The position numbers and the translations under genes were made by a program. Below the pieces are notes generated by a model. The model was not told the DNA's origin. It did no database searches and saw only the letters and a list, made by a program, of their open reading frames with translations. From positions 272,270-336,269 of the forward strand of contig NW_005434673.1 of NCBI RefSeq assembly GCF_000315625.1: 64,000 nt of DNA, in the 5' to 3' direction. This DNA comes from Guillardia theta CCMP2712 (taxonomy: Eukaryota; Protista; Cryptophyta). Of this stretch, positions 32,788 to 41,500 are shown piece by piece (the first letter of the stretch is position 1; every line of letters begins with the position of its first letter).

Positions 32788-34026
32788 CGTGACTGGTTGG
32801 CAGGATCACGAGTCAGGGAACTTAAAGGGGCTCCCATTCAACTTCGGCGTGACTCCCGTACGGTCCGGATCGCATCTGAGTCTGGTCACAGTCGGCAACT
32901 TGTCCGAGCCTTCACACTGAAGTGGCAGCCGGGTCGCACTGTTGCGGCCCGTGCCAACAAGAGGTTTGCTCCAACTGAGTTGCCGCCGGGCACATGACCG
33001 TGACGGTGACCCTGGTACACCGGCGGTGCCCCCGGGCCCCGTGTGTTCAACGGCCGGGCACGAGGGTGATCCCGGAATGCCGCAGGGAAGCAACCCGGTC
33101 TTCCGGGCCGCAGGCAGATGCCGCAGGGAAGCAACTGGGATCACGAGTCAGTCGGTCACCGGCGTGTCGACGGTCCGTGATTCTTCTGCTGTAAATGTGC
33201 TGACCACTGGCCCAAGTGGTCTTAGAGGCTTTATACGCCTCCCTACCAATGCCCGTTTAGTAGGATAAGGTTCGGTTGACTCTTTACCACACAAGAGCCT
33301 TGGAGGTTGGGCACCGTGTCGTCGTGCAAAACAGACAGCGTTGAAGGATAAAGTCAGCTCCTACTTGGATGCAATGAAATTTTGCTTCTAATTATCAAAT
33401 TTCTTCTCAGAGAAAATTAAATTGGATCATGGTTCGCCTCGCTTCCGTGCCTGAAGGTCACATGGGCCCAAAGAAGCCGCTGAGAGCAAGAGATACTTGA
33501 GGTCACGCACGATCTCAACCGTTGTAATTTCAGGACGGGATTACGACCCCGACACATTTCGATATCATGAAATATTTCAAATAATAGGGAAAATTTTGAA
33601 CATTGAGAGGATACCTTGAATATCCTGTGATTGTACCCATGTGATATGAATGTGAAATAACTCTTTTTGGGATTGCTATTGTGTAAGGCTGCCCTGCCAG
33701 TCACGAGGGCTCGCAACATACTCCATGGACCCCACCTCACAACATAAAACCATAGTAGTACCCCAGTGGGAACCTAGTCAGATAAAGAGCATATCAGTAG
33801 GGGTGGGGTACCCTACCCTGTGTGATCGGACGACTCCTCCGAACTAGATAAGAAGTAGTCGTGCCACTGCAAACCACTCGCTATCGCCCTCCCCTTCCCC
33901 GCTGTTCACGTCTCGCAAACAATCAGCGTGAGCCATCGCAGTCTGGATAACTGTAAGGAGTCTCGACTCCTTGCTTTCAATACACTCTAGTGAATATCGA
34001 AGCATCGAGGCCCTCCCCGCTCTATC

Positions 34027-34839
34027 ATGTCCACGACGATTTTTGCAAACTTTGAGCGAAACAATTTCAAGGTTGGAATCCCTGGTTTGGCGAACTCGAA
34101 AAGACAAGCCATTGACATGACACAAGAGCCAGCGACGTTTTCGAAGACCCCTAGCATTGAAGATACAATGAACATCCAGCATATGATGAACTCTACCTTG
34201 AAGCAAGACAACGACACTTGCCCTCTGGATGCGATTCGGGGATATATCAAGTCCCTTGGAGAGAAATCAGACCTCAAGGGCGAATTTCAACTAGATATTT
34301 CTGGTTGCTCCTTCAAATCAGAATCGTCGGTGCGAGAAACATGCTCTGACACAGTGGAGACGGGCTCCACGGGGCGTCAGGAGGACAGAGAACATGTGAT
34401 TGAGCGCGTGGCAGTGCTGCACATCGTCAACGACAAGTGGATCAAGATGCAGGTTTGTCAGGATCCTGCTCTTCCCAACTTTTGCCGGCTGCCGATGAGA
34501 AAACTCGATTCTTGCTGCTGGGATGAGATGGATTTGCCGGTGCATGAGATGGTCGAGGAGCTCTCTGGAAGAAGGTTACCAACGGACTACCAGCATTTCG
34601 ATTTCCGCAGCGGGCTGCACTTTTACGAAGATGGTGATGGAAAATCTAGCTGTGTTCCTTCCTTCACAAGAGTGGTCATACGACGAGAAGGACCTGGGCA
34701 TACCAAGGTAGATGTGATCGTACGCTCTGCAAATCTTGTTGCTCACTTTGTGAACAGGATATCAAGCTTTGCCCGGTCCAAAAAGTTTTGGATGGCTGGA
34801 AAGAACCGATTCACCTTTGCGAATTTTCGAAACGGATAG
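34027..34839 (+). CDS. Hypothetical protein, 270 aa, single exon
   Basis: Clean ATG-to-stop ORF with coding-like composition. No family recognised. Confidence 0.6.
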   Translation: MSTTIFANFERNNFKVGIPGLANSKRQAIDMTQEPATFSKTPSIEDTMNIQHMMNSTLKQDNDTCPLDAIRGYIKSLGEKSDLKGEFQLDISGCSFKSESSVRETCSDTVETGSTGRQEDREHVIERVAVLHIVNDKWIKMQVCQDPALPNFCRLPMRKLDSCCWDEMDLPVHEMVEELSGRRLPTDYQHFDFRSGLHFYEDGDGKSSCVPSFTRVVIRREGPGHTKVDVIVRSANLVAHFVNRISSFARSKKFWMAGKNRFTFANFRNG

Positions 34840-34979
34840 TACAAGAGAGCGTGAAAATGGGTCTTTTGAGGTTGTAAAGTAGGAATGAAGATCAGGAAAC
34901 GCGGAGGCCTTGACATTTCCCTCGAGCATCTCGAAGAGGAGTTCGAATCCAACCTTCCTTCTCACCTTTTCTCTTCCCC

Positions 34980-37900
34980 TCACTTGCCACGTGCAGTGAG
35001 CACCTGCTGCAGCAAATCAGCAGCTGCTGCCTTGGGATCGGGCTTGGCGAAGATGGCAGAGACAACAGCCACTCCAGAAGCTCCCGCCCTGGAACACAAC
35101 CGTCAGGAGGAGGAGGAGCCATAACGTACGAGCCTGATGGCCTCCCCGCAGTTGCTTGCGTTGAGCCCGCCGATGGCGACACATGGAATATCACAGCCCT
35201 TACACACCTACCGATCCCTTGTTAGTCAGAGTAGCGCAAAAAGAATGGCAAGCTGGGTACCTTGCTGAGGCCCTCCAAACCTATGGCTGAGCTGTCCTTA
35301 GTACTCGTCGGGTAGACAGCACCTGAGCCGATGTAGTCTGCTCCGTCCTCTTGAGCCTTGATCGCCTCTTCTCCCGTCTTGACGCTGACACCGACGATCT
35401 TGTGGGGTCCGAGGAGGCGCCTCACCTCATCACAGGGCATGTCATCCTGTCCCACATGCACGCCATCCGCGTCGCAGGCCAAGGCGATGTCGACCCGGTC
35501 GTTGACGATGAAGGGAACGTTGGCCGCCCGACAGATCGCCATGAGCTTTTTCGCCGTCTCAAGCATTTTTCTACTGTCCACGTCTTTCTGCCGCAGCTGG
35601 ATGATCGTTGCTCCTCCCTCAATTGCTTGGGAGACTGCATGCGAAAGTTCCATCCCCTGACCGGCGACACAAGAGTCATCGGTGACAGCATAGAGCGAGT
35701 AGTCGACCAAACGCCCACGGTAGATGGATTGTCCTTGTGGAATGTCTGCAGTCCTGATCGCATGCATCATGGAGTGCTGGTCGTGCCAACAGACACTCTT
35801 GTAGCTGTGATGGAGAGGTCCATGGCCGCCTCCAATCAGAAGCGACGAGCTCGCCCGGATCGCGTCCCACACGAACATCTTTGCTCTCTTCACAGCCTCC
35901 ACCATGCGCATCCCTTGCGCGAGCCCCGCAGCGATGCTGGAGGCAAGGGTGCAACCAGTCCCGTGGGTGTTCTCTGAATCAAGCTTCCAGGCAGGGAAGA
36001 CATGGCTCTCACCGGAGGAAGAGCAGTAGAGGACGTCAGGAATTATGCGGCTCCCCTCCACGTGGCCTCCCTTGATCATGACCCACTTGGGTCCCAGCTG
36101 GGCGAGCTCTCGAGCAGCATCGAGCATGTCCTCGGCTGTTCCGGAGATCGTTCTGTTAAGGAGCGCCATCGCCTCTGGCAGGTTGGGGGTGATGATGTCG
36201 GCCAGGGGGAAGAGAAGCTTCTTGATCTTGTCAATGGCCTCTGAATTGATGAGCTTGTCTCCGCTAGTCGCCACCATGACGGGGTCGACAACCCACTTCA
36301 CGATCCCCTTCCTCGCGACCGCACTTACAGCTGCTTCCACGACGCTGGCAGAGGCCAACATGCCGGTCTTGATGACGTCAGCTCCAATGTCCTCCAGACA
36401 AACTTCGATCTGCTTGCGGAGAAACGAGGGGGAAACAGGCTCTACAGCTGCCACTCCTCTCGTGTTCTGCGCCGTGAGAGCTGCGATGGCCGTCATGCTG
36501 TATGCTCCCAACGCTTGACAGGCCTTGATGTCTGCTTGAATGCCAGCACCTCCTCCACTGTCTGATCCTGCGATGATCAGAACCCTCGGAATCTTCGGAC
36601 TTGACATTGGAAAGCCAGAAAACTTGCTCTTCAATAGGAGGTTGAATTTCTCTTGGCCCTGCTGAGAGACCGTAGAAGAGGGAAAGTGGTTGAGAACCGA
36701 GAAGAAGATGCTCGCGCCGGCCTTGCAGTATTCAACACAGTCTCGCTCACTCAGCCCGTGTTCGCTCGGTGCGATCTGCTCCACCTCTTTCGCCAGCTCG
36801 TCCTGAAAGCTCAGAATACCCTTGAAGGAGTCCAAAGTCGTCGACTGCAACTTGTTTGAAGCAGAGTTCTCTTGCAGGAAGTTGCAGAAAGATATGAAAG
36901 TGTGGGTGAACGAAGCGAGGATGAGGGAAGCAGCATACTTGGAGTAAGCTCTTGTGCTGTCTACCAACTCTCTCCATGAAGGGATCATGCGGAGCCAGTG
37001 CGTGCGATCAGAATCCGATAGAAGTCCATGATCCTGAAATGACGGAGTTCGGTTCACAATGCTTCCCGCAGCCCTCATTAAGGTCTCAAGTTCCTTCTCA
37101 ACATTCTCGTTGAACAGGAGACACGCCATCATGCGGTGAGATAGACACCTCTGAATCTCGCTCTGTGACGACGCCAGGAGTTGGCTCAAAGGCAAATGGA
37201 GCTTCTCAGTCTTTGTGACGTCTTCGATCCTGTAAACTTTCATCTTCGAGTTTCTGTCCAGGTAAGGCGCTTCCATTTCGTAGAGATTCTCTATCATCTT
37301 CACCCTGAGAACTCCAGGATTTCGAGCATGACAAACCTCAGCAGAAACGCCGAGGAGGACAAAGGCCGCGCAAGTCGCTTCCAGCACACAGGACGGTTCG
37401 CTCGCCACACAAGACGCCACAAGAGCCGAGAGCGAGCAACCAACTCCCGTGATCTTCGTCATCAGAGCATCTCCATTGTGAACCTCGACAACGATCTTCC
37501 CGTCTGTGATGCGATCAACGCTTCCGCTGATAGCAACGACACATTCCTGACGCCGAGCCAGTGCGATCGCAGCAGGTAAAGCCTCATCCGTGGTATCGGT
37601 AGCGTCAGCTCCTCTTCCGAACGACTTTCTCTCTTCACTCTTTGTGCATGCCATGGACAGCGCGAGGATCTCGCTGGCGTTTCCTCGGATCACCGTAGGC
37701 TTGTAGTCCAGCGCCCTGACGCAGTTGTTTGTCCTGAAGGTCGTACTCCCACAGGCGACAGGGTCCAGCACCCATGGCTTGCGAAGATCCCGTGCGAACT
37801 TCATGGCTGCCTCTACCTCCACCACTCTTGCAGGAGTAAGGCTGCCCATGTTGACTGCCGCGGCATCTGCCTTCTTCATGAATTCCGCCGTTTCCTCTGC

Positions 37901-38297
37901 GGCGCACACCATGGCCGGAGACGAGCCCACTGCCAAGAGCACGTTAGCCGTGATGTCCATGGAGACAGGAGTCTGCAGGCACTGGATCAAGGGAACTTTC
38001 TCTCTCAGGTGCTGTAGAATCTGTCCAGGTGATCGCTGGAGCAAGTGAAGATCCGACATGTTTGGAAATTGCATAGCAAAAAGCAGCCTCCTTCCGCTGG
38101 TATTACCCAGAGCAAGTTCAAAGGGTGTTTCTCAGCTCACCACTCCCTCTGGTGGCACCCCTGGCTGATGCTGCTGCTCAAGTCCTGCAATGAAGGAAGT
38201 CACATGAACGAACGCAGCAAGATTGGAACGCAAACAGCACAAGGAAGCATGAACTTTCACTCTCTACATCTTCCTCTTCCTCATCATATCTGCTCAT
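34980..38297 (-). CDS. Thiamine salvage polyprotein: ThiM (hydroxyethylthiazole kinase), TenA-like helical domain, ThiD (HMP/HMP-P kinase), ThiE (thiamine-phosphate synthase)
   Basis: ThiM: TANVLLAVGSSPAM, PWVLDPVACG, IRGNASEI, ITGVGCSLS. ThiD: IAGSDSGGGAGIQADIK, VVDPVMVATSG, ITPNLPEA, IKGGH, HGTGCTLAS. ThiE: LYAVTD, IQLRQK, IVNDRVDIAL...DGVHVGQDD, PTSTK. Two more exons (introns 35208-35260 and 35089-35133) give VAIGGLN and GVAVVSAIF, with the stop at 34980. The start is either 38074 (unspliced) or 38297 (spliced model). Confidence 0.93.
38084..38167 (-). ncRNA. TPP (THI-box) riboswitch aptamer
   Basis: Minus strand reads CAGCC-AGGGGTG-CCACCAGAGGGAGTGGTGAGC-TGAGA-AACACCCT-TTGAA-CTTGCT-CTGGGTAATACCAG-CG-GAAGGA-GGCTG. 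P1 is CAGCC/GGCTG, P2 is GGGTG/CACCC, and the P3 hairpin, the conserved UGAGA and UGAA, P5 CUGG/CCAG with a UAAU loop and the GCG are all present. It lies directly 5' of a thiamine gene. Confidence 0.93.
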
Positions 38298-38581
38298 GTC
38301 TACTTGCTCTTCCCTTCAACATCGCTCTTTTCTTGTAATCCTCTGCTTCATCCCCATAGTCCCCCAAGCTCTTCTCGTTCCTCCCTCGCCTGCTTCCCCG
38401 GCCTCCTACGAGCCATAGCCGCGCCCTGTCTTTGTCTTTGCGGGCCGAGATCCGGCCAAATTCCCGGGGCCTGAGAGTTCCGCCGGGCCCGGACCGCCCG
38501 CTCACTGAGAGAAAAGGCCGCGCTCAGACGGTCATAGATTTCCTTCTCATAAAAGCTTTACATGACATTCAATTTACATTC

Positions 38582-41500
38582 CTACTCATCTACTTCCCAG
38601 CAGATGATGCGTTCAGGATCGCAGTCCAGCTGCTTCCCGAGCTCATCTCGAAGTGTCTCGACGTCAAAGTCCTCGTCCAAGAGCAGGATCAGAGTGTCGG
38701 CATCTTCCTCGTCCTCCTCACCGTCCCTGAACGCTTCCTCCACCTTCTCGTTCCAGCCCGACCGCCCGGCCTTCTCAGGCAGCTCTTGCTCTCCCATGAC
38801 CAAGTTCTTCTCGAAGTCGACGCTCATGGCGTCCTGCTCCTCCTCCTCCTCCTCAGAGCCCTCGCTACTGGTCGAGATGCTCTTGAAGTCCGAGAGGGAA
38901 GAAAGTTCCTCCCTATCCACCTCGACACCGATGCGGTTCCCGTAGTTGGTGATCTTCTCTGCAAAGATCACTTTCTTCGCAGCGTCCCTGTGCATCTTGT
39001 AGTCAACCTCCTCCTCCTGCACCTGCTTCTGATAGTTGGCATCCGCCGCCAGCTCCTTCAGCATCTGCACCATCTGCGATCCGATCTGAACTTGCCTAAG
39101 GACAAACTTGAGGGCCTCGCGCGACTCTCGGATGATTTCTTCCGTCTTATCAGAGATGCGCGAGAACTCGATCTGCTTGTCCATCCGACGGTTCAGAAAC
39201 GCGTCCGCGCACGCCAGGGCGATGGCGATGACAACTGGAGAAAAAGGAGGATGAGTCGCAGGGGACATGCGATCTGGTGCAGACCTGTGTTGATGACTCC
39301 GTAAAGGGTCGTGCTGACCGCCGTGAAGGAGGCGAAGCAGACAAGGAGGAAGGCGTCAAGGACAGCGAGGACGATGAAGGTGATCATGCACTGCTGGAGG
39401 ATCCTGATGCGCGAATGGCCCAACTTGTGCCTCAGCCGCGCGGCCTGCAACAATCACGGTTAGACCGCAACACAGGAGGAAGGGAGGTTGAGAGACCTTC
39501 TGGTTCAAGAGGATCGCGACAAGATCTGTGTTGAAACCCCTTGACAAGACAGGAGCCACTCTTGCTATCTTATCGTCGATCGCCCGGACAATGCGCTTCT
39601 TGATGATGGAGGACTTGGAGTACCTGCGGTAGACGACGACAAACAATCCTGCTATCGCTGTCACGTACGGGCAGAACCTGGCAGTGTCAAAGAGAATGCC
39701 GAGGCAGATCCACACGATGACGGCGCAAGCGTAAGTGAGGGAGATGACGAGAGCGATGGACAGAGCGATGTAGAAGATCCTTCTCAAGATGCGCCGAAAC
39801 TTGTTCATCCTGATGGTCGTGTAGTGGGCGATGAGTTCGGCGATGAAGATTCCTAGCAGGGCGGCGTCGAGGAGGTTCAAGATCAGAGTGTAGGAGCTCA
39901 TCTTAGCCCGGCACTTGGCCGGGTCTGCAGCCTGAGGACAAATGAACTTGTCCTTGGCGGAGTCGATCTGTATGCCCAGCAGGAGTATGGGAAGCAGGAG
40001 GACGCAAGCGAACGCGACTTGGAAGAGCGTGACCAAGAAGGTGAGCTGGACAGACTTGGACTCCTTGGGATCGAAGAGCTGCAGCTCCACGAAGTAGAAG
40101 AAGCTCGTCTGCTTCACGATCTCTTCCTCGTCGGCGATCGAGAGGTCGTTGGAGACATTCTGCTCCTCTGCGTCGTCCCCACTCGTGTGCGCGCTCTGCA
40201 GCAGCTTCCTCTGGGCGGTTGTGTTGTCCCGCAGCATCCTGCGGTAGTCCAGGATCTCCCGGTTCGCGAGTCTCAGGATGGAGTAGACCAGGGAGAGAGC
40301 GACGAGGATAGGGATGCATATGGCCAGTACCAGGAAGACCAAGTACATCGGGCGGGTCGAGTAGCTCTCCTGTACCATCGAGTAGTCTCCTGTCTTGGGG
40401 TCGGTCTTGAACACGATGAAGGGTTTGCCCGGCTCACTGTAAGCAAGGAAGGAAGTGGAAGGGAGCTCGTTGGCTCCGATAGCAGTCCACAAGATCGAAT
40501 AAGCGTTCTTGATGTAGTTGGCGTTCAGCTCGTCAGGGATCTTGGCCTGCATCAGTCTGCGCGCACTTCCTGGGTACTTGGAGCTCAACATGCTCCTGCC
40601 GTACGCGTCCAGGTTGCCTCCGAAAGTGACAGTTCCAGCCGGTAACTGCTCGGGGGCAGAGGAGGAATCGAAATACGGGCATGGTGAAGGCACAAAGTTG
40701 ACAAACACGGCCGTGCTGGAGGGGACGACAATCCCAAAGGTGAGGATCTCCAGAAGCTCTCGAGTGAAGACCAGGTAGCGCGGGTCAGACACCCACACGA
40801 ACTTCCCAAAGGGGGCTCCGGGCCCCTGCAGGTTGATCTCAAACCAGTCCTCCGTCGGTCGGTTGGCTCCTCCGGGATTGAAGACCGACTGCAAACCGTC
40901 TAGGCCGGAAGGCGACAACCCGACAGTTCGGTTGCCGTTGAGCCCGTCGTAGACGTAGTAGCGATCGAGCGTGCCCCTGCCTGCGAAGGGCGGTAGCCTT
41001 GTCTCCGAGATCGTGCTGTACTGAATTTCTCCTGTCTCCGATGTCAGGTCGACGTACCGCACTTGCAGACCAGGTTCGGGGCTCTTCCTGTAGGGGAGGA
41101 GAGTACCAGAGCTGTACTTGCTGCAACTCCACATGCATGCGACAGAGGTGATGTTCTTGAAGACGGTTGCAGTGGGGGAGAGCCCTAGGTTCTGCAGCTC
41201 GAACCTGTTCAACTTTACGCTGGTTGTCACGTTCCGACAGGAGATGTCGCACAGATCTTTGTATGAGAAGGAATCTGTGAGGACAGTCGGCAGGGCTGAG
41301 ACGAGGCACACTTTGTTCTCGCTCTGCTTCACGCTCACCATAGATTGAATCTGCATCTTTTCATCGTCACTTGTACTCATGATGACGTCAGCATTGACGG
41401 TTGAGATCTGAACTTGGTCAAAGGAAGCGTTACGGATTGAGATCAGTCCAGCCGTGACATTGGCTTGGAACAGACGAGCCTTGGAATTGAAGAGACTCAA

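What the first reader, a model, noticed from the sequence alone, without database searches (positions are those of the whole stretch)
34980..38074. Whole thiamine-salvage pathway in one polypeptide (ThiM-TenA-like-ThiD-ThiE)
Seen: ThiM, ThiD and most of ThiE lie in one uninterrupted 950-codon ORF with catalytic motifs intact, so the fusion is not a splicing artefact. Known: the familiar eukaryotic fusions are two-part (fungal THI6 = ThiE+ThiM, yeast THI20 = ThiD+TenA, plant TH1 = ThiD+ThiE). Inference: this protein could make thiamine monophosphate from free thiazole and HMP precursors in one chain, possibly with channelling. That would suit an alga scavenging vitamin B1 fragments. No targeting presequence is evident, which suggests it is cytosolic.
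Basis: partly seen in the sequence, partly recalled or inferred. Interest (0 to 1): 0.85.

Follow-up and report, generated by a model that had tools for sequence, protein, structure and literature searches.

The report
Three-enzyme vitamin B1 fusion gene
A cryptophyte alga (Guillardia theta) makes one 998-residue protein carrying the three enzymes that turn free thiazole and pyrimidine precursors into thiamine monophosphate, behind a vitamin-sensing RNA switch; the fusion is real and expressed, but databases and papers list it as two genes, and its proposed fourth "TenA-like" part is unproven.

Summary
A 950-codon ORF (38074..35222, minus strand) plus two short exons gives a 998-aa protein: ThiM (residues 20-267), an unassigned helical segment (268-504), ThiD (505-755) and ThiE (794-end). 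Catalytic residues are intact. Transcript contigs from two independent studies cover the locus as one spliced molecule, including a GC-AG intron. A full-length TPP riboswitch (65 bits) abuts the ATG. The genome is Guillardia theta CCMP2712.

The fusion itself appears undescribed. The public model is a 468-aa "TH1" starting at internal Met490, with a wrong C-terminus. McRose et al. 2014 list THIM (with this riboswitch) and TH1 as separate proteins.

The "TenA-like" label is not established. Pfam, an exhaustive phmmer search, hhalign and Atlas searches found nothing. One low-confidence model ranks TenA structures first (Z 8-9.3); a second model does not.

Three-enzyme thiamine fusions are not unique. 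Bacteria have ThiM-ThiE-ThiD, an unplaced contig has ThiE-ThiM-ThiD, and Perkinsus has TenA-ThiD-ThiE-ThiM. Trees show the cryptophyte order arose independently, from a eukaryotic TH1-type gene.

Channelling and cytosolic location are untested. This is a new domain order of known enzymes and a useful annotation correction, of moderate interest.

The parts
38072..38172 (-). TPP riboswitch aptamer in the 5' UTR; its 3' end overlaps the ATG (38074-38072)
   Evidence: Rfam RF00059, 65.2 bits against a gathering score of 54.3, model positions 1-105 of 105. It is present in the transcript contigs, which reach 38154 and 38186. McRose 2014 reported it as the G. theta THIM 5'-UTR riboswitch.
35261..38074 (-).
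   Evidence: The transcript contigs are continuous over 35259-38154 and 35259-38186 with no internal joint.
37274..38017 (-). ThiM (hydroxyethylthiazole kinase) domain, residues 20-267
   Evidence: Pfam HK 204 bits. NCBIfam NF006830 scores 232 bits against a cutoff of 180. Cys213 aligns with the catalytic Cys198 of B. subtilis ThiK.
36563..37273 (-). Middle segment, residues 268-504: all-helical, fast-evolving, of unknown family (a possible degenerate TenA/heme-oxygenase-like fold)
   Evidence: No Pfam hit. No hit among 1.84 billion representative proteins. It is 62% identical to Hanusia with no indel over 237 residues. AF2 model 1 (pLDDT 52) matches TenA structures best, at Z 8-9.3. Model 2 does not.
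35810..36562 (-). ThiD (HMP / HMP-P kinase) domain, residues 505-755
   Evidence: Pfam Phos_pyr_kin 306 bits. TIGR00097 scores 305 bits against a cutoff of 205. The best solved relative is 7r8y at E 3e-76. The GTGC motif is present.
35261..35695 (-). ThiE (thiamine-phosphate synthase) domain, first part, residues 794-938
   Evidence: Pfam TMP-TENI 177 bits, profile 1-144. TIGR00693 scores 174 bits against a cutoff of 145. The equivalents of B. subtilis ThiE Gln57, Arg59, Lys61, Asn92, Asp93, Asp112, Ser130, Thr156, Thr158 and Lys159 are all identical.
35208..35260 (-). Intron 1, 53 nt, GT-AG
   Evidence: The joint is present in contigs of runs X1 and X2. The public model P0241 removes the same intron.
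35134..35207 (-). Coding exon 2 (VCKGCDIPCVAIGGLNASNCGEAI plus two bases of an Arg codon), continuing ThiE
   Evidence: TMP-TENI profile positions 145-166; joints.
35089..35133 (-). Intron 2, 45 nt, GC-AG (non-canonical donor)
   Evidence: A 45-base skip is present in the X1 and X2 contigs. Its 4-base placement ambiguity includes the GC..AG cut. Only this cut keeps the frame. The resulting ...GEAIRAGASGVAVVSAIF matches the relative P0003's ...GETIRAGAVGVAVVSAVF. The public model misses this intron.
34980..35088 (-). Coding exon 3, the end of ThiE, with stop codon TGA at 34982-34980
   Evidence: Translation; match to the C-terminus of P0003.

Best explanation
This is one nuclear gene of Guillardia theta. 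It has three coding exons and encodes a 998-residue protein with the order ThiM, helical middle segment, ThiD, ThiE. The protein phosphorylates hydroxyethylthiazole (ThiM). It phosphorylates HMP twice to HMP-PP (ThiD). It then condenses the two products into thiamine monophosphate (ThiE). Expression is fed back by the end product through a TPP-binding aptamer in the 5' UTR that ends on the start codon. The genome has no ThiC, so the pyrimidine half must come from outside or from TenA-type recycling. THI4 is present, so the ThiM part serves thiazole salvage rather than de novo supply. The fusion arose when ThiM plus the middle segment were joined to the N-terminus of a eukaryotic TH1-type ThiD-ThiE gene. 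This happened once, in the lineage that includes Hanusia and several environmental relatives. Shown here: the domain content, the catalytic residues, a single spliced transcript, the aptamer, and the independent origin. Inferred: the enzyme activities, the regulation by TPP, and a hexamer-type assembly like that of THI6. The assembly idea rests only on my recollection that ThiM is a trimer and that ThiD and ThiE are dimers.
For: Domains and thresholds. Catalytic residues. One spliced transcript contig in each of two independent studies, and unspliced DNA contigs with no sequence differences. Hanusia phi has a transcript-derived 935-aa orthologue with the same order at 80% identity. More ThiM-middle-ThiD proteins occur on environmental eukaryote-like contigs. 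Riboswitch. Genome context: ThiC absent, THI4 present, this is the only strong ThiD, and the second TMP-TENI locus lacks the ThiE catalytic residues. In the trees the clade is monophyletic in both ThiD (100/98) and ThiM (100/99). Its ThiD lies inside the eukaryotic TH1 group and apart from the ThiM-ThiE-ThiD and ThiE-ThiM-ThiD fusions.
Against: There are no protein-level data, so cleavage into separate enzymes after translation is possible. Assembled contigs cannot exclude additional shorter transcripts from an internal start. The raw RNA run gave only 27 reads, biased to the 3' end. No activity was measured. The way the riboswitch acts is unknown. Only aptamer-containing mRNA was seen, and one contig carries 10 unexplained bases at a 5'-UTR acceptor.
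Confidence: 0.85

Rival explanations
1. The protein is a four-part chain whose middle segment is a TenA-derived domain. It is either a still active, highly diverged aminopyrimidine hydrolase or a degenerate copy kept as a scaffold or ligand-binding module. The ancestor would be a TenA-ThiD-ThiE protein like those of green algae and Perkinsus.
For: With AF2 model 1, the eight best of 48,161 PDB representatives are all TenA/thiaminase II proteins (Z 8.0-9.3, 149-175 residues aligned over the whole domain). Heme oxygenases, CADD and the TenA domain of yeast THI20 follow. In the Foldseek list the highest probability and TM-score rows are also TenA (1udd, probability 0.77, TM 0.40-0.48). The segment sits directly N-terminal to ThiD, as genuine TenA does in Perkinsus, whereas in green-algal proteins a HAD domain lies between TenA and ThiD. 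Environmental relatives read 'FHPMMLMLVSGH' where TenA has 'HHPFVQGLGDGT'. The segment is kept without indels between Guillardia and Hanusia.
Against: No TENA_THI-4 hit at E<=10 in any of eight orthologues. hhalign against real TenA domains gives E 0.08 and 0.012, with probability under 4%, and the two runs align in different registers. There are no phmmer hits among 1.84 billion proteins and no Atlas match by features or by shape. Model 1 has pLDDT 52. The second model (pLDDT 41) matches only generic helical bundles. Z values below about 13 are unreliable for helical bundles, by the tool's own note. The residues that are invariant in the TenA alignment (the QD, PC.RLY and E..FF motifs) are not recognisable in this segment. 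Real TenA genes lie elsewhere in the genome.
Confidence: 0.3
2. There are two gene products, as in the public annotation: a ThiM protein and a separate TH1 (ThiD-ThiE) protein. They would come from one locus through an internal promoter, internal initiation at Met490, or proteolytic cleavage in the middle segment.
For: The NCBI/UniProt model P0241 begins at Met490. McRose 2014 lists THIM (62773) and TH1 (62657) as separate proteins. The middle segment evolves faster than the enzymes. Contigs cannot rule out extra isoforms.
Against: No stop codon interrupts the 938 codons of exon 1. The transcript contigs are continuous across the supposed gene boundary in two studies. The Hanusia transcript encodes the same single ORF. 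Environmental relatives also keep ThiM, the middle segment and ThiD in one ORF. The public model is demonstrably faulty elsewhere: it removes an intron the RNA does not support and misses the GC-AG intron. A 237-residue spacer kept without any indel is not expected for an intergenic or cleaved linker.
Confidence: 0.1
3. The middle segment is only a long structured spacer with no function of its own. It would be a relic of the sequence between two formerly adjacent genes, or of a lost transit peptide.
For: It has no detectable family. Its length varies between relatives from 237 to about 378 residues, and identity to them is only 20-26%. Predicted-structure confidence is low.
Against: It is 62% identical with no indels between two genera. 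Both models predict the same helices. Several positions are invariant across all relatives.
Confidence: 0.35

Closest known systems
Plant and green-algal TH1 (bifunctional HMP-P kinase / TMP synthase, order ThiD-ThiE)
   Same: It has the same ThiD-then-ThiE order and 47-52% identity over that half. Its ThiD domain falls inside the eukaryotic TH1 group in the tree.
   Different: The window protein carries ThiM plus a 237-residue helical segment at the N-terminus, where plants have a chloroplast transit peptide. It also has a 5'-UTR TPP riboswitch.
Fungal THI6 (order ThiE-ThiM; structures 3nl2 and 3nm1 of Candida glabrata)
   Same: It joins the thiazole kinase and the TMP synthase in one chain. 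The window's ThiE matches THI6 at E 4e-36 and its ThiM at E 1e-15.
   Different: The order is opposite, THI6 has no ThiD, and in the window protein the two domains are separated by more than 500 residues.
Yeast THI20/THI21 (ThiD-TenA, 'trifunctional', structure 3rm5)
   Same: ThiD is fused to a helical TenA-type domain. The TenA domain of 3rm5 matches model 1 at Z 7.0.
   Different: In THI20 the TenA domain is C-terminal and is a recognisable family member. Here the helical segment is N-terminal to ThiD and fails every sequence test for TenA.
Database-only multi-domain fusions: bacterial ThiM-ThiE-ThiD (P0009, P0014 and others), ThiE-ThiM-ThiD (P0004), and Perkinsus chesapeaki TenA-ThiD-ThiE-ThiM (P0007)
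   Same: These combine the same three activities in one chain. The bacterial ThiM-ThiE-ThiD gene and the ThiE-ThiM-ThiD gene also carry a TPP riboswitch on their start codon.
   Different: Their domain order is different and their origin is separate: in the ThiD tree they form a separate group (100/99). None has the middle segment. I found no paper that describes any of them.
G. theta 'THIM riboswitch' of McRose et al. 2014 (PMC4260697)
   Same: It is the same aptamer at the same gene: 5' UTR of THIM, EKX55217.
   Different: That paper treats THIM (62773) and TH1 (62657) as separate, co-located proteins. The riboswitch in fact heads one mRNA for all three enzymes.

Membership tests
Hydroxyethylthiazole kinase (ThiM/ThiK, Pfam PF02110) | Profile match above the curated threshold over the full domain | tested here: met
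   PF02110 scores 204 bits (cutoff 27) over profile 1-244 of 247. NF006830 scores 232 bits (cutoff 180). TIGR00694 scores 203 bits, below its stricter cutoff of 256.
Hydroxyethylthiazole kinase (ThiM/ThiK, Pfam PF02110) | Catalytic cysteine (Cys198 of B. subtilis ThiK) in the G-x-G-C motif | tested here: met
   Cys213 in 'TGVGC' aligns with position 210 of chain 1c3q, which is native Cys198. The role of this residue is from my knowledge of the ThiK literature.
HMP/HMP-P kinase (ThiD, Pfam PF08543) | Profile match above threshold, and the ribokinase-type G-T-G-C anion-hole motif | tested here: met
   PF08543 scores 306 bits over 1-246 of 246. TIGR00097 scores 305 bits (cutoff 205). 'HGTGCTLAS' is present. 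The best solved relative matches at E 3e-76.
Thiamine-phosphate synthase (ThiE, Pfam PF02581) | Full-length TIM-barrel domain | tested here: met
   Profile positions 1-144 lie in exon 1 and 145-166 in exon 2. Exon 3 supplies the GVAVVSAI strand. TIGR00693 scores 174 bits (cutoff 145) from exon 1 alone.
Thiamine-phosphate synthase (ThiE, Pfam PF02581) | Substrate- and Mg-binding residues of B. subtilis ThiE (Gln57, Arg59, Lys61, Asn92, Asp93, Asp112, Ser130, Thr156, Thr158, Lys159) | tested here: met
   All ten are identical in the alignment to 1g4t/2tps, whose chain numbering is native minus 8. The residue roles are from my knowledge of the ThiE literature.
TenA / thiaminase II (Pfam PF03070) | Sequence-profile membership | tested here: not met
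   There is no PF03070 hit at E<=10 for the window segment or for seven orthologous segments. hhalign against real TenA domains gives probability 0.7% and 3.6%. The six-frame PF03070 search of the genome hits only other contigs.
TenA / thiaminase II (Pfam PF03070) | Heme-oxygenase-like all-helical fold | tested here: inconclusive
   Model 1 (pLDDT 52, pTM 0.54) has TenA structures as its top eight matches, at Z 8.0-9.3. Model 2 (pLDDT 41) and the Atlas shape search show no TenA. No Foldseek E-value reaches 0.001.
TenA / thiaminase II (Pfam PF03070) | Catalytic Asp, Cys and Glu (Asp44, Cys135, Glu205 of B. subtilis TenA) | tested here: inconclusive
   The corresponding invariant motifs of the TenA alignment are not recognisable in the segment by eye. 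Without a reliable alignment, no residue can be mapped.
TPP riboswitch (Rfam RF00059) | Covariance-model score above the gathering threshold over the whole aptamer | tested here: met
   65.2 bits against 54.3, model positions 1-105 of 105. The conserved CUGAGA and ACCCUUUGAAC...CUGGGUAAUACCAGCG elements are present.
TPP riboswitch (Rfam RF00059) | Ligand-dependent control of expression | not testable with these tools
   Only aptamer-containing transcripts were seen. No data from cultures with and without thiamine were available.

The most novel reading that the evidence does not exclude
The middle segment is a functional fourth module peculiar to this algal lineage. It could be a very diverged TenA-type hydrolase that converts aminopyrimidine breakdown products to HMP. 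Alternatively it could bind a precursor or TPP and gate the flanking kinases. In either case a single riboswitch-controlled chain would run the entire route from environmental B1 fragments to thiamine monophosphate.
Probability: 0.12. Interest if true: 0.65.

Novelty: new variant of a known kind. Interest (0 to 1): 0.45.

Why it matters
It corrects the gene model of a reference algal genome. What is listed as THIM plus a truncated TH1 is one gene with a GC-AG intron and a complete ThiE. This changes how the only reported eukaryotic "THIM riboswitch" should be read: it governs all three late steps of thiamine assembly at once. It also adds a fourth, independently evolved domain order to the thiamine gene fusions, which is useful for work on why these enzymes fuse repeatedly and whether intermediates are channelled. 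For marine ecology, it gives a single marker gene for precursor-salvaging cryptophytes. Relatives are already visible in metagenomes. The enzymes themselves are ordinary.

Tried and rejected
1. TenA membership by sequence was rejected. Pfam was run at E<=10 on the window segment and seven orthologues. hhalign was run against four genuine TenA domains. An exhaustive phmmer search covered 1.84 billion representatives and gave 0 hits, not even the protein's own cluster. ESM Atlas features peaked at 0.80, which is noise level.

2. Deepening the alignment to eight sequences, to improve the fold, made the model worse (pLDDT 41). The TenA matches disappeared. The Atlas shape search gave TM <= 0.31.

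3. I looked for the upstream exon implied by the 10 unmatched bases on contig X2. The two exact matches in the window are 21 kb and 29 kb away. I read only the 21-kb one, which lies upstream: it is not followed by a donor. Matches with mismatches are at chance level. This stays unexplained.

4. An assembly or read-through artefact was rejected: DNA contigs from a 2011 run match the window with no differences, and RNA contigs from two studies are spliced.

5. Descent from the bacterial ThiM-ThiE-ThiD type was rejected by the ThiD tree.

6. A thiamine gene cluster in the neighbourhood was rejected: the four flanking ORFs tested have no Pfam family.

7. Papers describing a ThiM-ThiD-ThiE fusion: none found in four searches.

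8. I did not run complex prediction, because the report makes no binding claim that it could test within its 1000-residue limit.

Each was searched by reference, so no search used the complete 998-residue sequence.
Full report
THE OBSERVATION. The minus strand carries an uninterrupted ORF of 950 codons from 38074 to 35222. Pfam places hydroxyethylthiazole kinase (HK/ThiM) at residues 20-267 and HMP/HMP-P kinase (Phos_pyr_kin/ThiD) at 505-755. Thiamine-phosphate synthase (TMP-TENI/ThiE) is at 794-939 and breaks off at profile position 144 of 180. NCBIfam agrees: NF006830, TIGR00097 and TIGR00693 all score above their cutoffs.

The ORF leaves the ThiE frame at a GT donor at 35260. Two short exons follow. 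Exon 2 (35207-35134) continues the same profile at positions 145-166. Exon 3 (35088-34980) reads AGASGVAVVSAIFAKPDPK...GK*. The coding sequence is 2997 nt, giving 998 residues.

Active-site residues are intact. Cys213 aligns with the catalytic Cys198 of B. subtilis ThiK. The ten substrate- and metal-binding residues of B. subtilis ThiE are all identical. ThiD keeps its GTGC motif.

IT IS ONE EXPRESSED GENE. Assembled contigs from two different studies were laid on 34900-38600. X1 dates from 2014 (depth about 1740) and X2 from 2019 (depth about 42). Each covers the whole coding region as one molecule, up to 38154 and 38186. Exactly two pieces are removed: 35260-35208 (GT-AG, 53 nt) and a 45-nt piece whose only frame-keeping cut is 35133-35089, a GC-AG intron. 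Contigs of a 2011 run are unspliced and identical to the window, so they are DNA.

A 60%-identical environmental relative reads ...GETIRAGAVGVAVVSAVF across the second junction. This matches the GC-AG reading.

The raw RNA run gave only 27 reads, biased to the 3' end. Shorter extra isoforms therefore cannot be excluded.

WHOSE GENE, AND WHAT WAS KNOWN. The assembly has 87.1 Mb in 669 contigs. The database holds a 468-aa 'putative TH1 [Guillardia theta CCMP2712]' that matches this locus. That public model is wrong in three ways:
- It starts at internal Met490.
- It removes 15-16 codons (residues 762-777) that the RNA retains.
- It misses the GC-AG intron, so it ends ...AIRLVRYGSSSS* without the last 35 residues of ThiE.

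McRose et al. 2014 (PMC4260697) list G. theta THIM as protein 62773 (EKX55217). They list THID and THIE as protein 62657, and they report a 5'-UTR TPP riboswitch 'affiliated with THIM'. Later papers that I could search add nothing on this locus. The parts were therefore known, but the fusion was not.

Independent support comes from a transcript-derived 935-aa protein of the cryptophyte Hanusia phi. It has the same order, 80% identity and 98% coverage.

THE RIBOSWITCH. Rfam finds a complete TPP aptamer at 38172-38072 on the coding strand: 65.2 bits against a gathering score of 54.3. Its last bases are the ATG. Both transcript contigs contain it.

An in-frame TGA (38134-38132) lies in the aptamer's CUGAGA element, as read. 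Contig X2 ends at a 'ttgcag' acceptor (38187-38185) with 10 bases that match nothing nearby. A second acceptor-like 'ctccag' ends at 38036, in phase with codon 14.

I saw no joint at the distal site, but the data are too thin to judge. The consequence for this finding is that the N-terminus MQFPNMSD..., which has no signal- or transit-like stretch, belongs to the aptamer-containing mRNA. 'Cytosolic' is plausible but not secure.

THE MIDDLE SEGMENT (268-504). Sequence tests found nothing:
- There is no Pfam family at E<=10, here or in seven orthologous segments.
- There are no phmmer hits among 1.84 billion representative proteins.
- There is nothing in the Atlas by features.
- hhalign against genuine TenA domains gives probabilities of 0.7% and 3.6%, and the two runs align in different registers.

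The segment is nevertheless not a floppy linker. Between Guillardia and Hanusia it is 62% identical with no indel in 237 residues. The comparable figures are 84% for ThiM, 90% for ThiD and 92% for ThiE. Both structure predictions give the same eight or so helices.

Their Z values are 8.0-9.3, with 149-175 residues aligned across the whole domain. Heme oxygenases, CADD and the TenA domain of yeast THI20 follow. Foldseek's best TM-scores are also TenA, though no E-value is significant.

With the second, poorer model the TenA matches vanish. The Atlas shape search is empty. The tool itself warns that Z below about 13 means little for helical bundles.

My reading is that a TenA/heme-oxygenase-like origin is possible, at about 0.3. 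Genuine TenA sits directly before ThiD in Perkinsus, and before a HAD domain and ThiD in green algae. Relatives also keep an 'FHP' remnant of TenA's 'HHPF' motif. Membership is not shown, however, and an active TenA is unlikely. Real TenA genes lie on other contigs.

HOW COMMON IS THE ARCHITECTURE. The protein databases say otherwise:
- ThiM-ThiE-ThiD proteins of about 780 aa, one of them on a plainly bacterial contig.
- A ThiE-ThiM-ThiD protein.
- A 946-aa Perkinsus chesapeaki protein with the order TenA-ThiD-ThiE-ThiM.
- Green-algal TenA-HAD-ThiD-ThiE proteins.

The bacterial ThiM-ThiE-ThiD gene and the ThiE-ThiM-ThiD gene also carry a TPP riboswitch on their start codon. I found none of these described in the literature.

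The window's order (ThiM, middle segment, ThiD, ThiE) is shared only with Hanusia and a handful of environmental proteins at 52-61% identity. Some of these sit on contigs with eukaryote-type neighbours and a weak TPP-aptamer hit upstream.

In maximum-likelihood trees these proteins are monophyletic for both ThiD (100/98) and ThiM (100/99). Their ThiD lies within the eukaryotic TH1 group with plants, green algae and Perkinsus. It is separated at 100/99 from the ThiM-ThiE-ThiD and ThiE-ThiM-ThiD group. Their ThiM is not inside the plant ThiM clade; its weak grouping with bacterial ThiMs (92/87) is unresolved. Rows were chosen by hand from the search hits, and partial domains were left out.

The simplest history is a TH1-type ThiD-ThiE gene that gained ThiM and the middle segment at its 5' end, once in this lineage.

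PATHWAY CONTEXT. The genome has no ThiC and a strong THI4 (326 bits). This locus is the only strong ThiD. A second TMP-TENI ORF on C56 is 28% identical and lacks the equivalents of Gln57, Lys61, Asp112 and Lys159, so it is probably not a TMP synthase. Further HK-family loci exist on C78 and C220.

The alga can thus make thiazole but not the pyrimidine, as McRose et al. inferred. ThiD here is the entry point for salvaged HMP, and ThiM is a salvage extra. The flanking ORFs tested have no recognisable family.

MECHANISM AND LIMITS. The likely chemistry is standard:
- HET + ATP gives HET-P.
- HMP + 2 ATP gives HMP-PP.
- HMP-PP + HET-P gives TMP + PPi.

TMP then needs a phosphatase and thiamine pyrophosphokinase to become TPP. 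TPP would bind the aptamer and lower expression. Co-translation guarantees a 1:1:1 ratio of the enzymes under one regulator; that much follows from the structure of the gene. Channelling is a suggestion already made in the literature for TH1 (PMC11169455), not a measured property, and I have no evidence for it here.

VERDICT. The finding is a real, expressed fusion in a domain order that has not been described, and a clear correction to a reference annotation. It is made of ordinary enzymes in a pathway famous for fusions, and other three- and four-part versions already sit in the databases. The 'TenA-like' fourth part remains an open question. I class it as a new variant of a known kind, with interest 0.45.

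Noticed in passing
window 34980-36607, minus strand (public protein P0241): The public G. theta 'putative TH1' model (468 aa) starts at internal Met490. It removes 15-16 codons (residues 762-777) that the RNA contigs retain. It reads into the GC-AG intron, so it ends ...AIRLVRYGSSSS* and lacks the true last 35 residues.
   Followed up: yes
window 38186-38196: Transcript contig X2 carries 10 bases (TGACCAGCCG on the + strand) beyond 38186, at a 'ttgcag' acceptor. This implies a 5'-UTR intron, but the upstream exon could not be found in the window.
   Followed up: partly
window 38030-38190, minus strand: An in-frame TGA (38134-38132) lies inside the aptamer. An acceptor-like 'ctccag' ends at 38036, in phase with codon 14. 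In the minimum-energy fold, the 'UUGCAGG' of the upstream acceptor pairs with the bases at and after the AUG, extending P1 (z-score not significant). This may bear on how the switch works.
   Followed up: partly
L003:2867-2975 and L006:22-113: The bacterial ThiM-ThiE-ThiD gene and the ThiE-ThiM-ThiD gene each have a full TPP riboswitch (67 and 61 bits) overlapping their start codons.
   Followed up: no
L004:2572-2657: A weak TPP-aptamer hit (23 bits, E 0.04) lies about 125 nt upstream of an environmental ThiM-middle-ThiD gene. This suggests the riboswitch is older than Guillardia but has diverged.
   Followed up: no
G000:C56:424158-424685 (L007:1069-1788, minus strand): A stand-alone 240-aa TMP-TENI family ORF, 28% identical to the fusion's ThiE, lacks several ThiE catalytic residues. 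It may be a TenI-like protein or have another function.
   Followed up: partly
G000:C78:106716-107239 and G000:C220:32877-33524: There are further HK (ThiM-family) loci in the same genome. The first is multi-exon. The second has stops in frame, so it contains introns or is a pseudogene. I saw neither listed for G. theta in the parts of the algal thiamine papers that I read.
   Followed up: partly
proteins P0007, P0061, P0110: Perkinsus chesapeaki has a TenA-ThiD-ThiE-ThiM protein (946 aa). Green algae ([Myrmecia] bisecta and an unnamed relative) have TenA-HAD-ThiD-ThiE proteins (1054-1178 aa). I found neither described in the papers searched.
   Followed up: partly
window 33900-34900: Both RNA contigs run about 900-1000 nt past the stop codon, across a convergent 270-aa ORF (34027-34839, + strand) with no Pfam family. 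This is either overlapping 3' ends of two genes or a very long 3' UTR.
   Followed up: no
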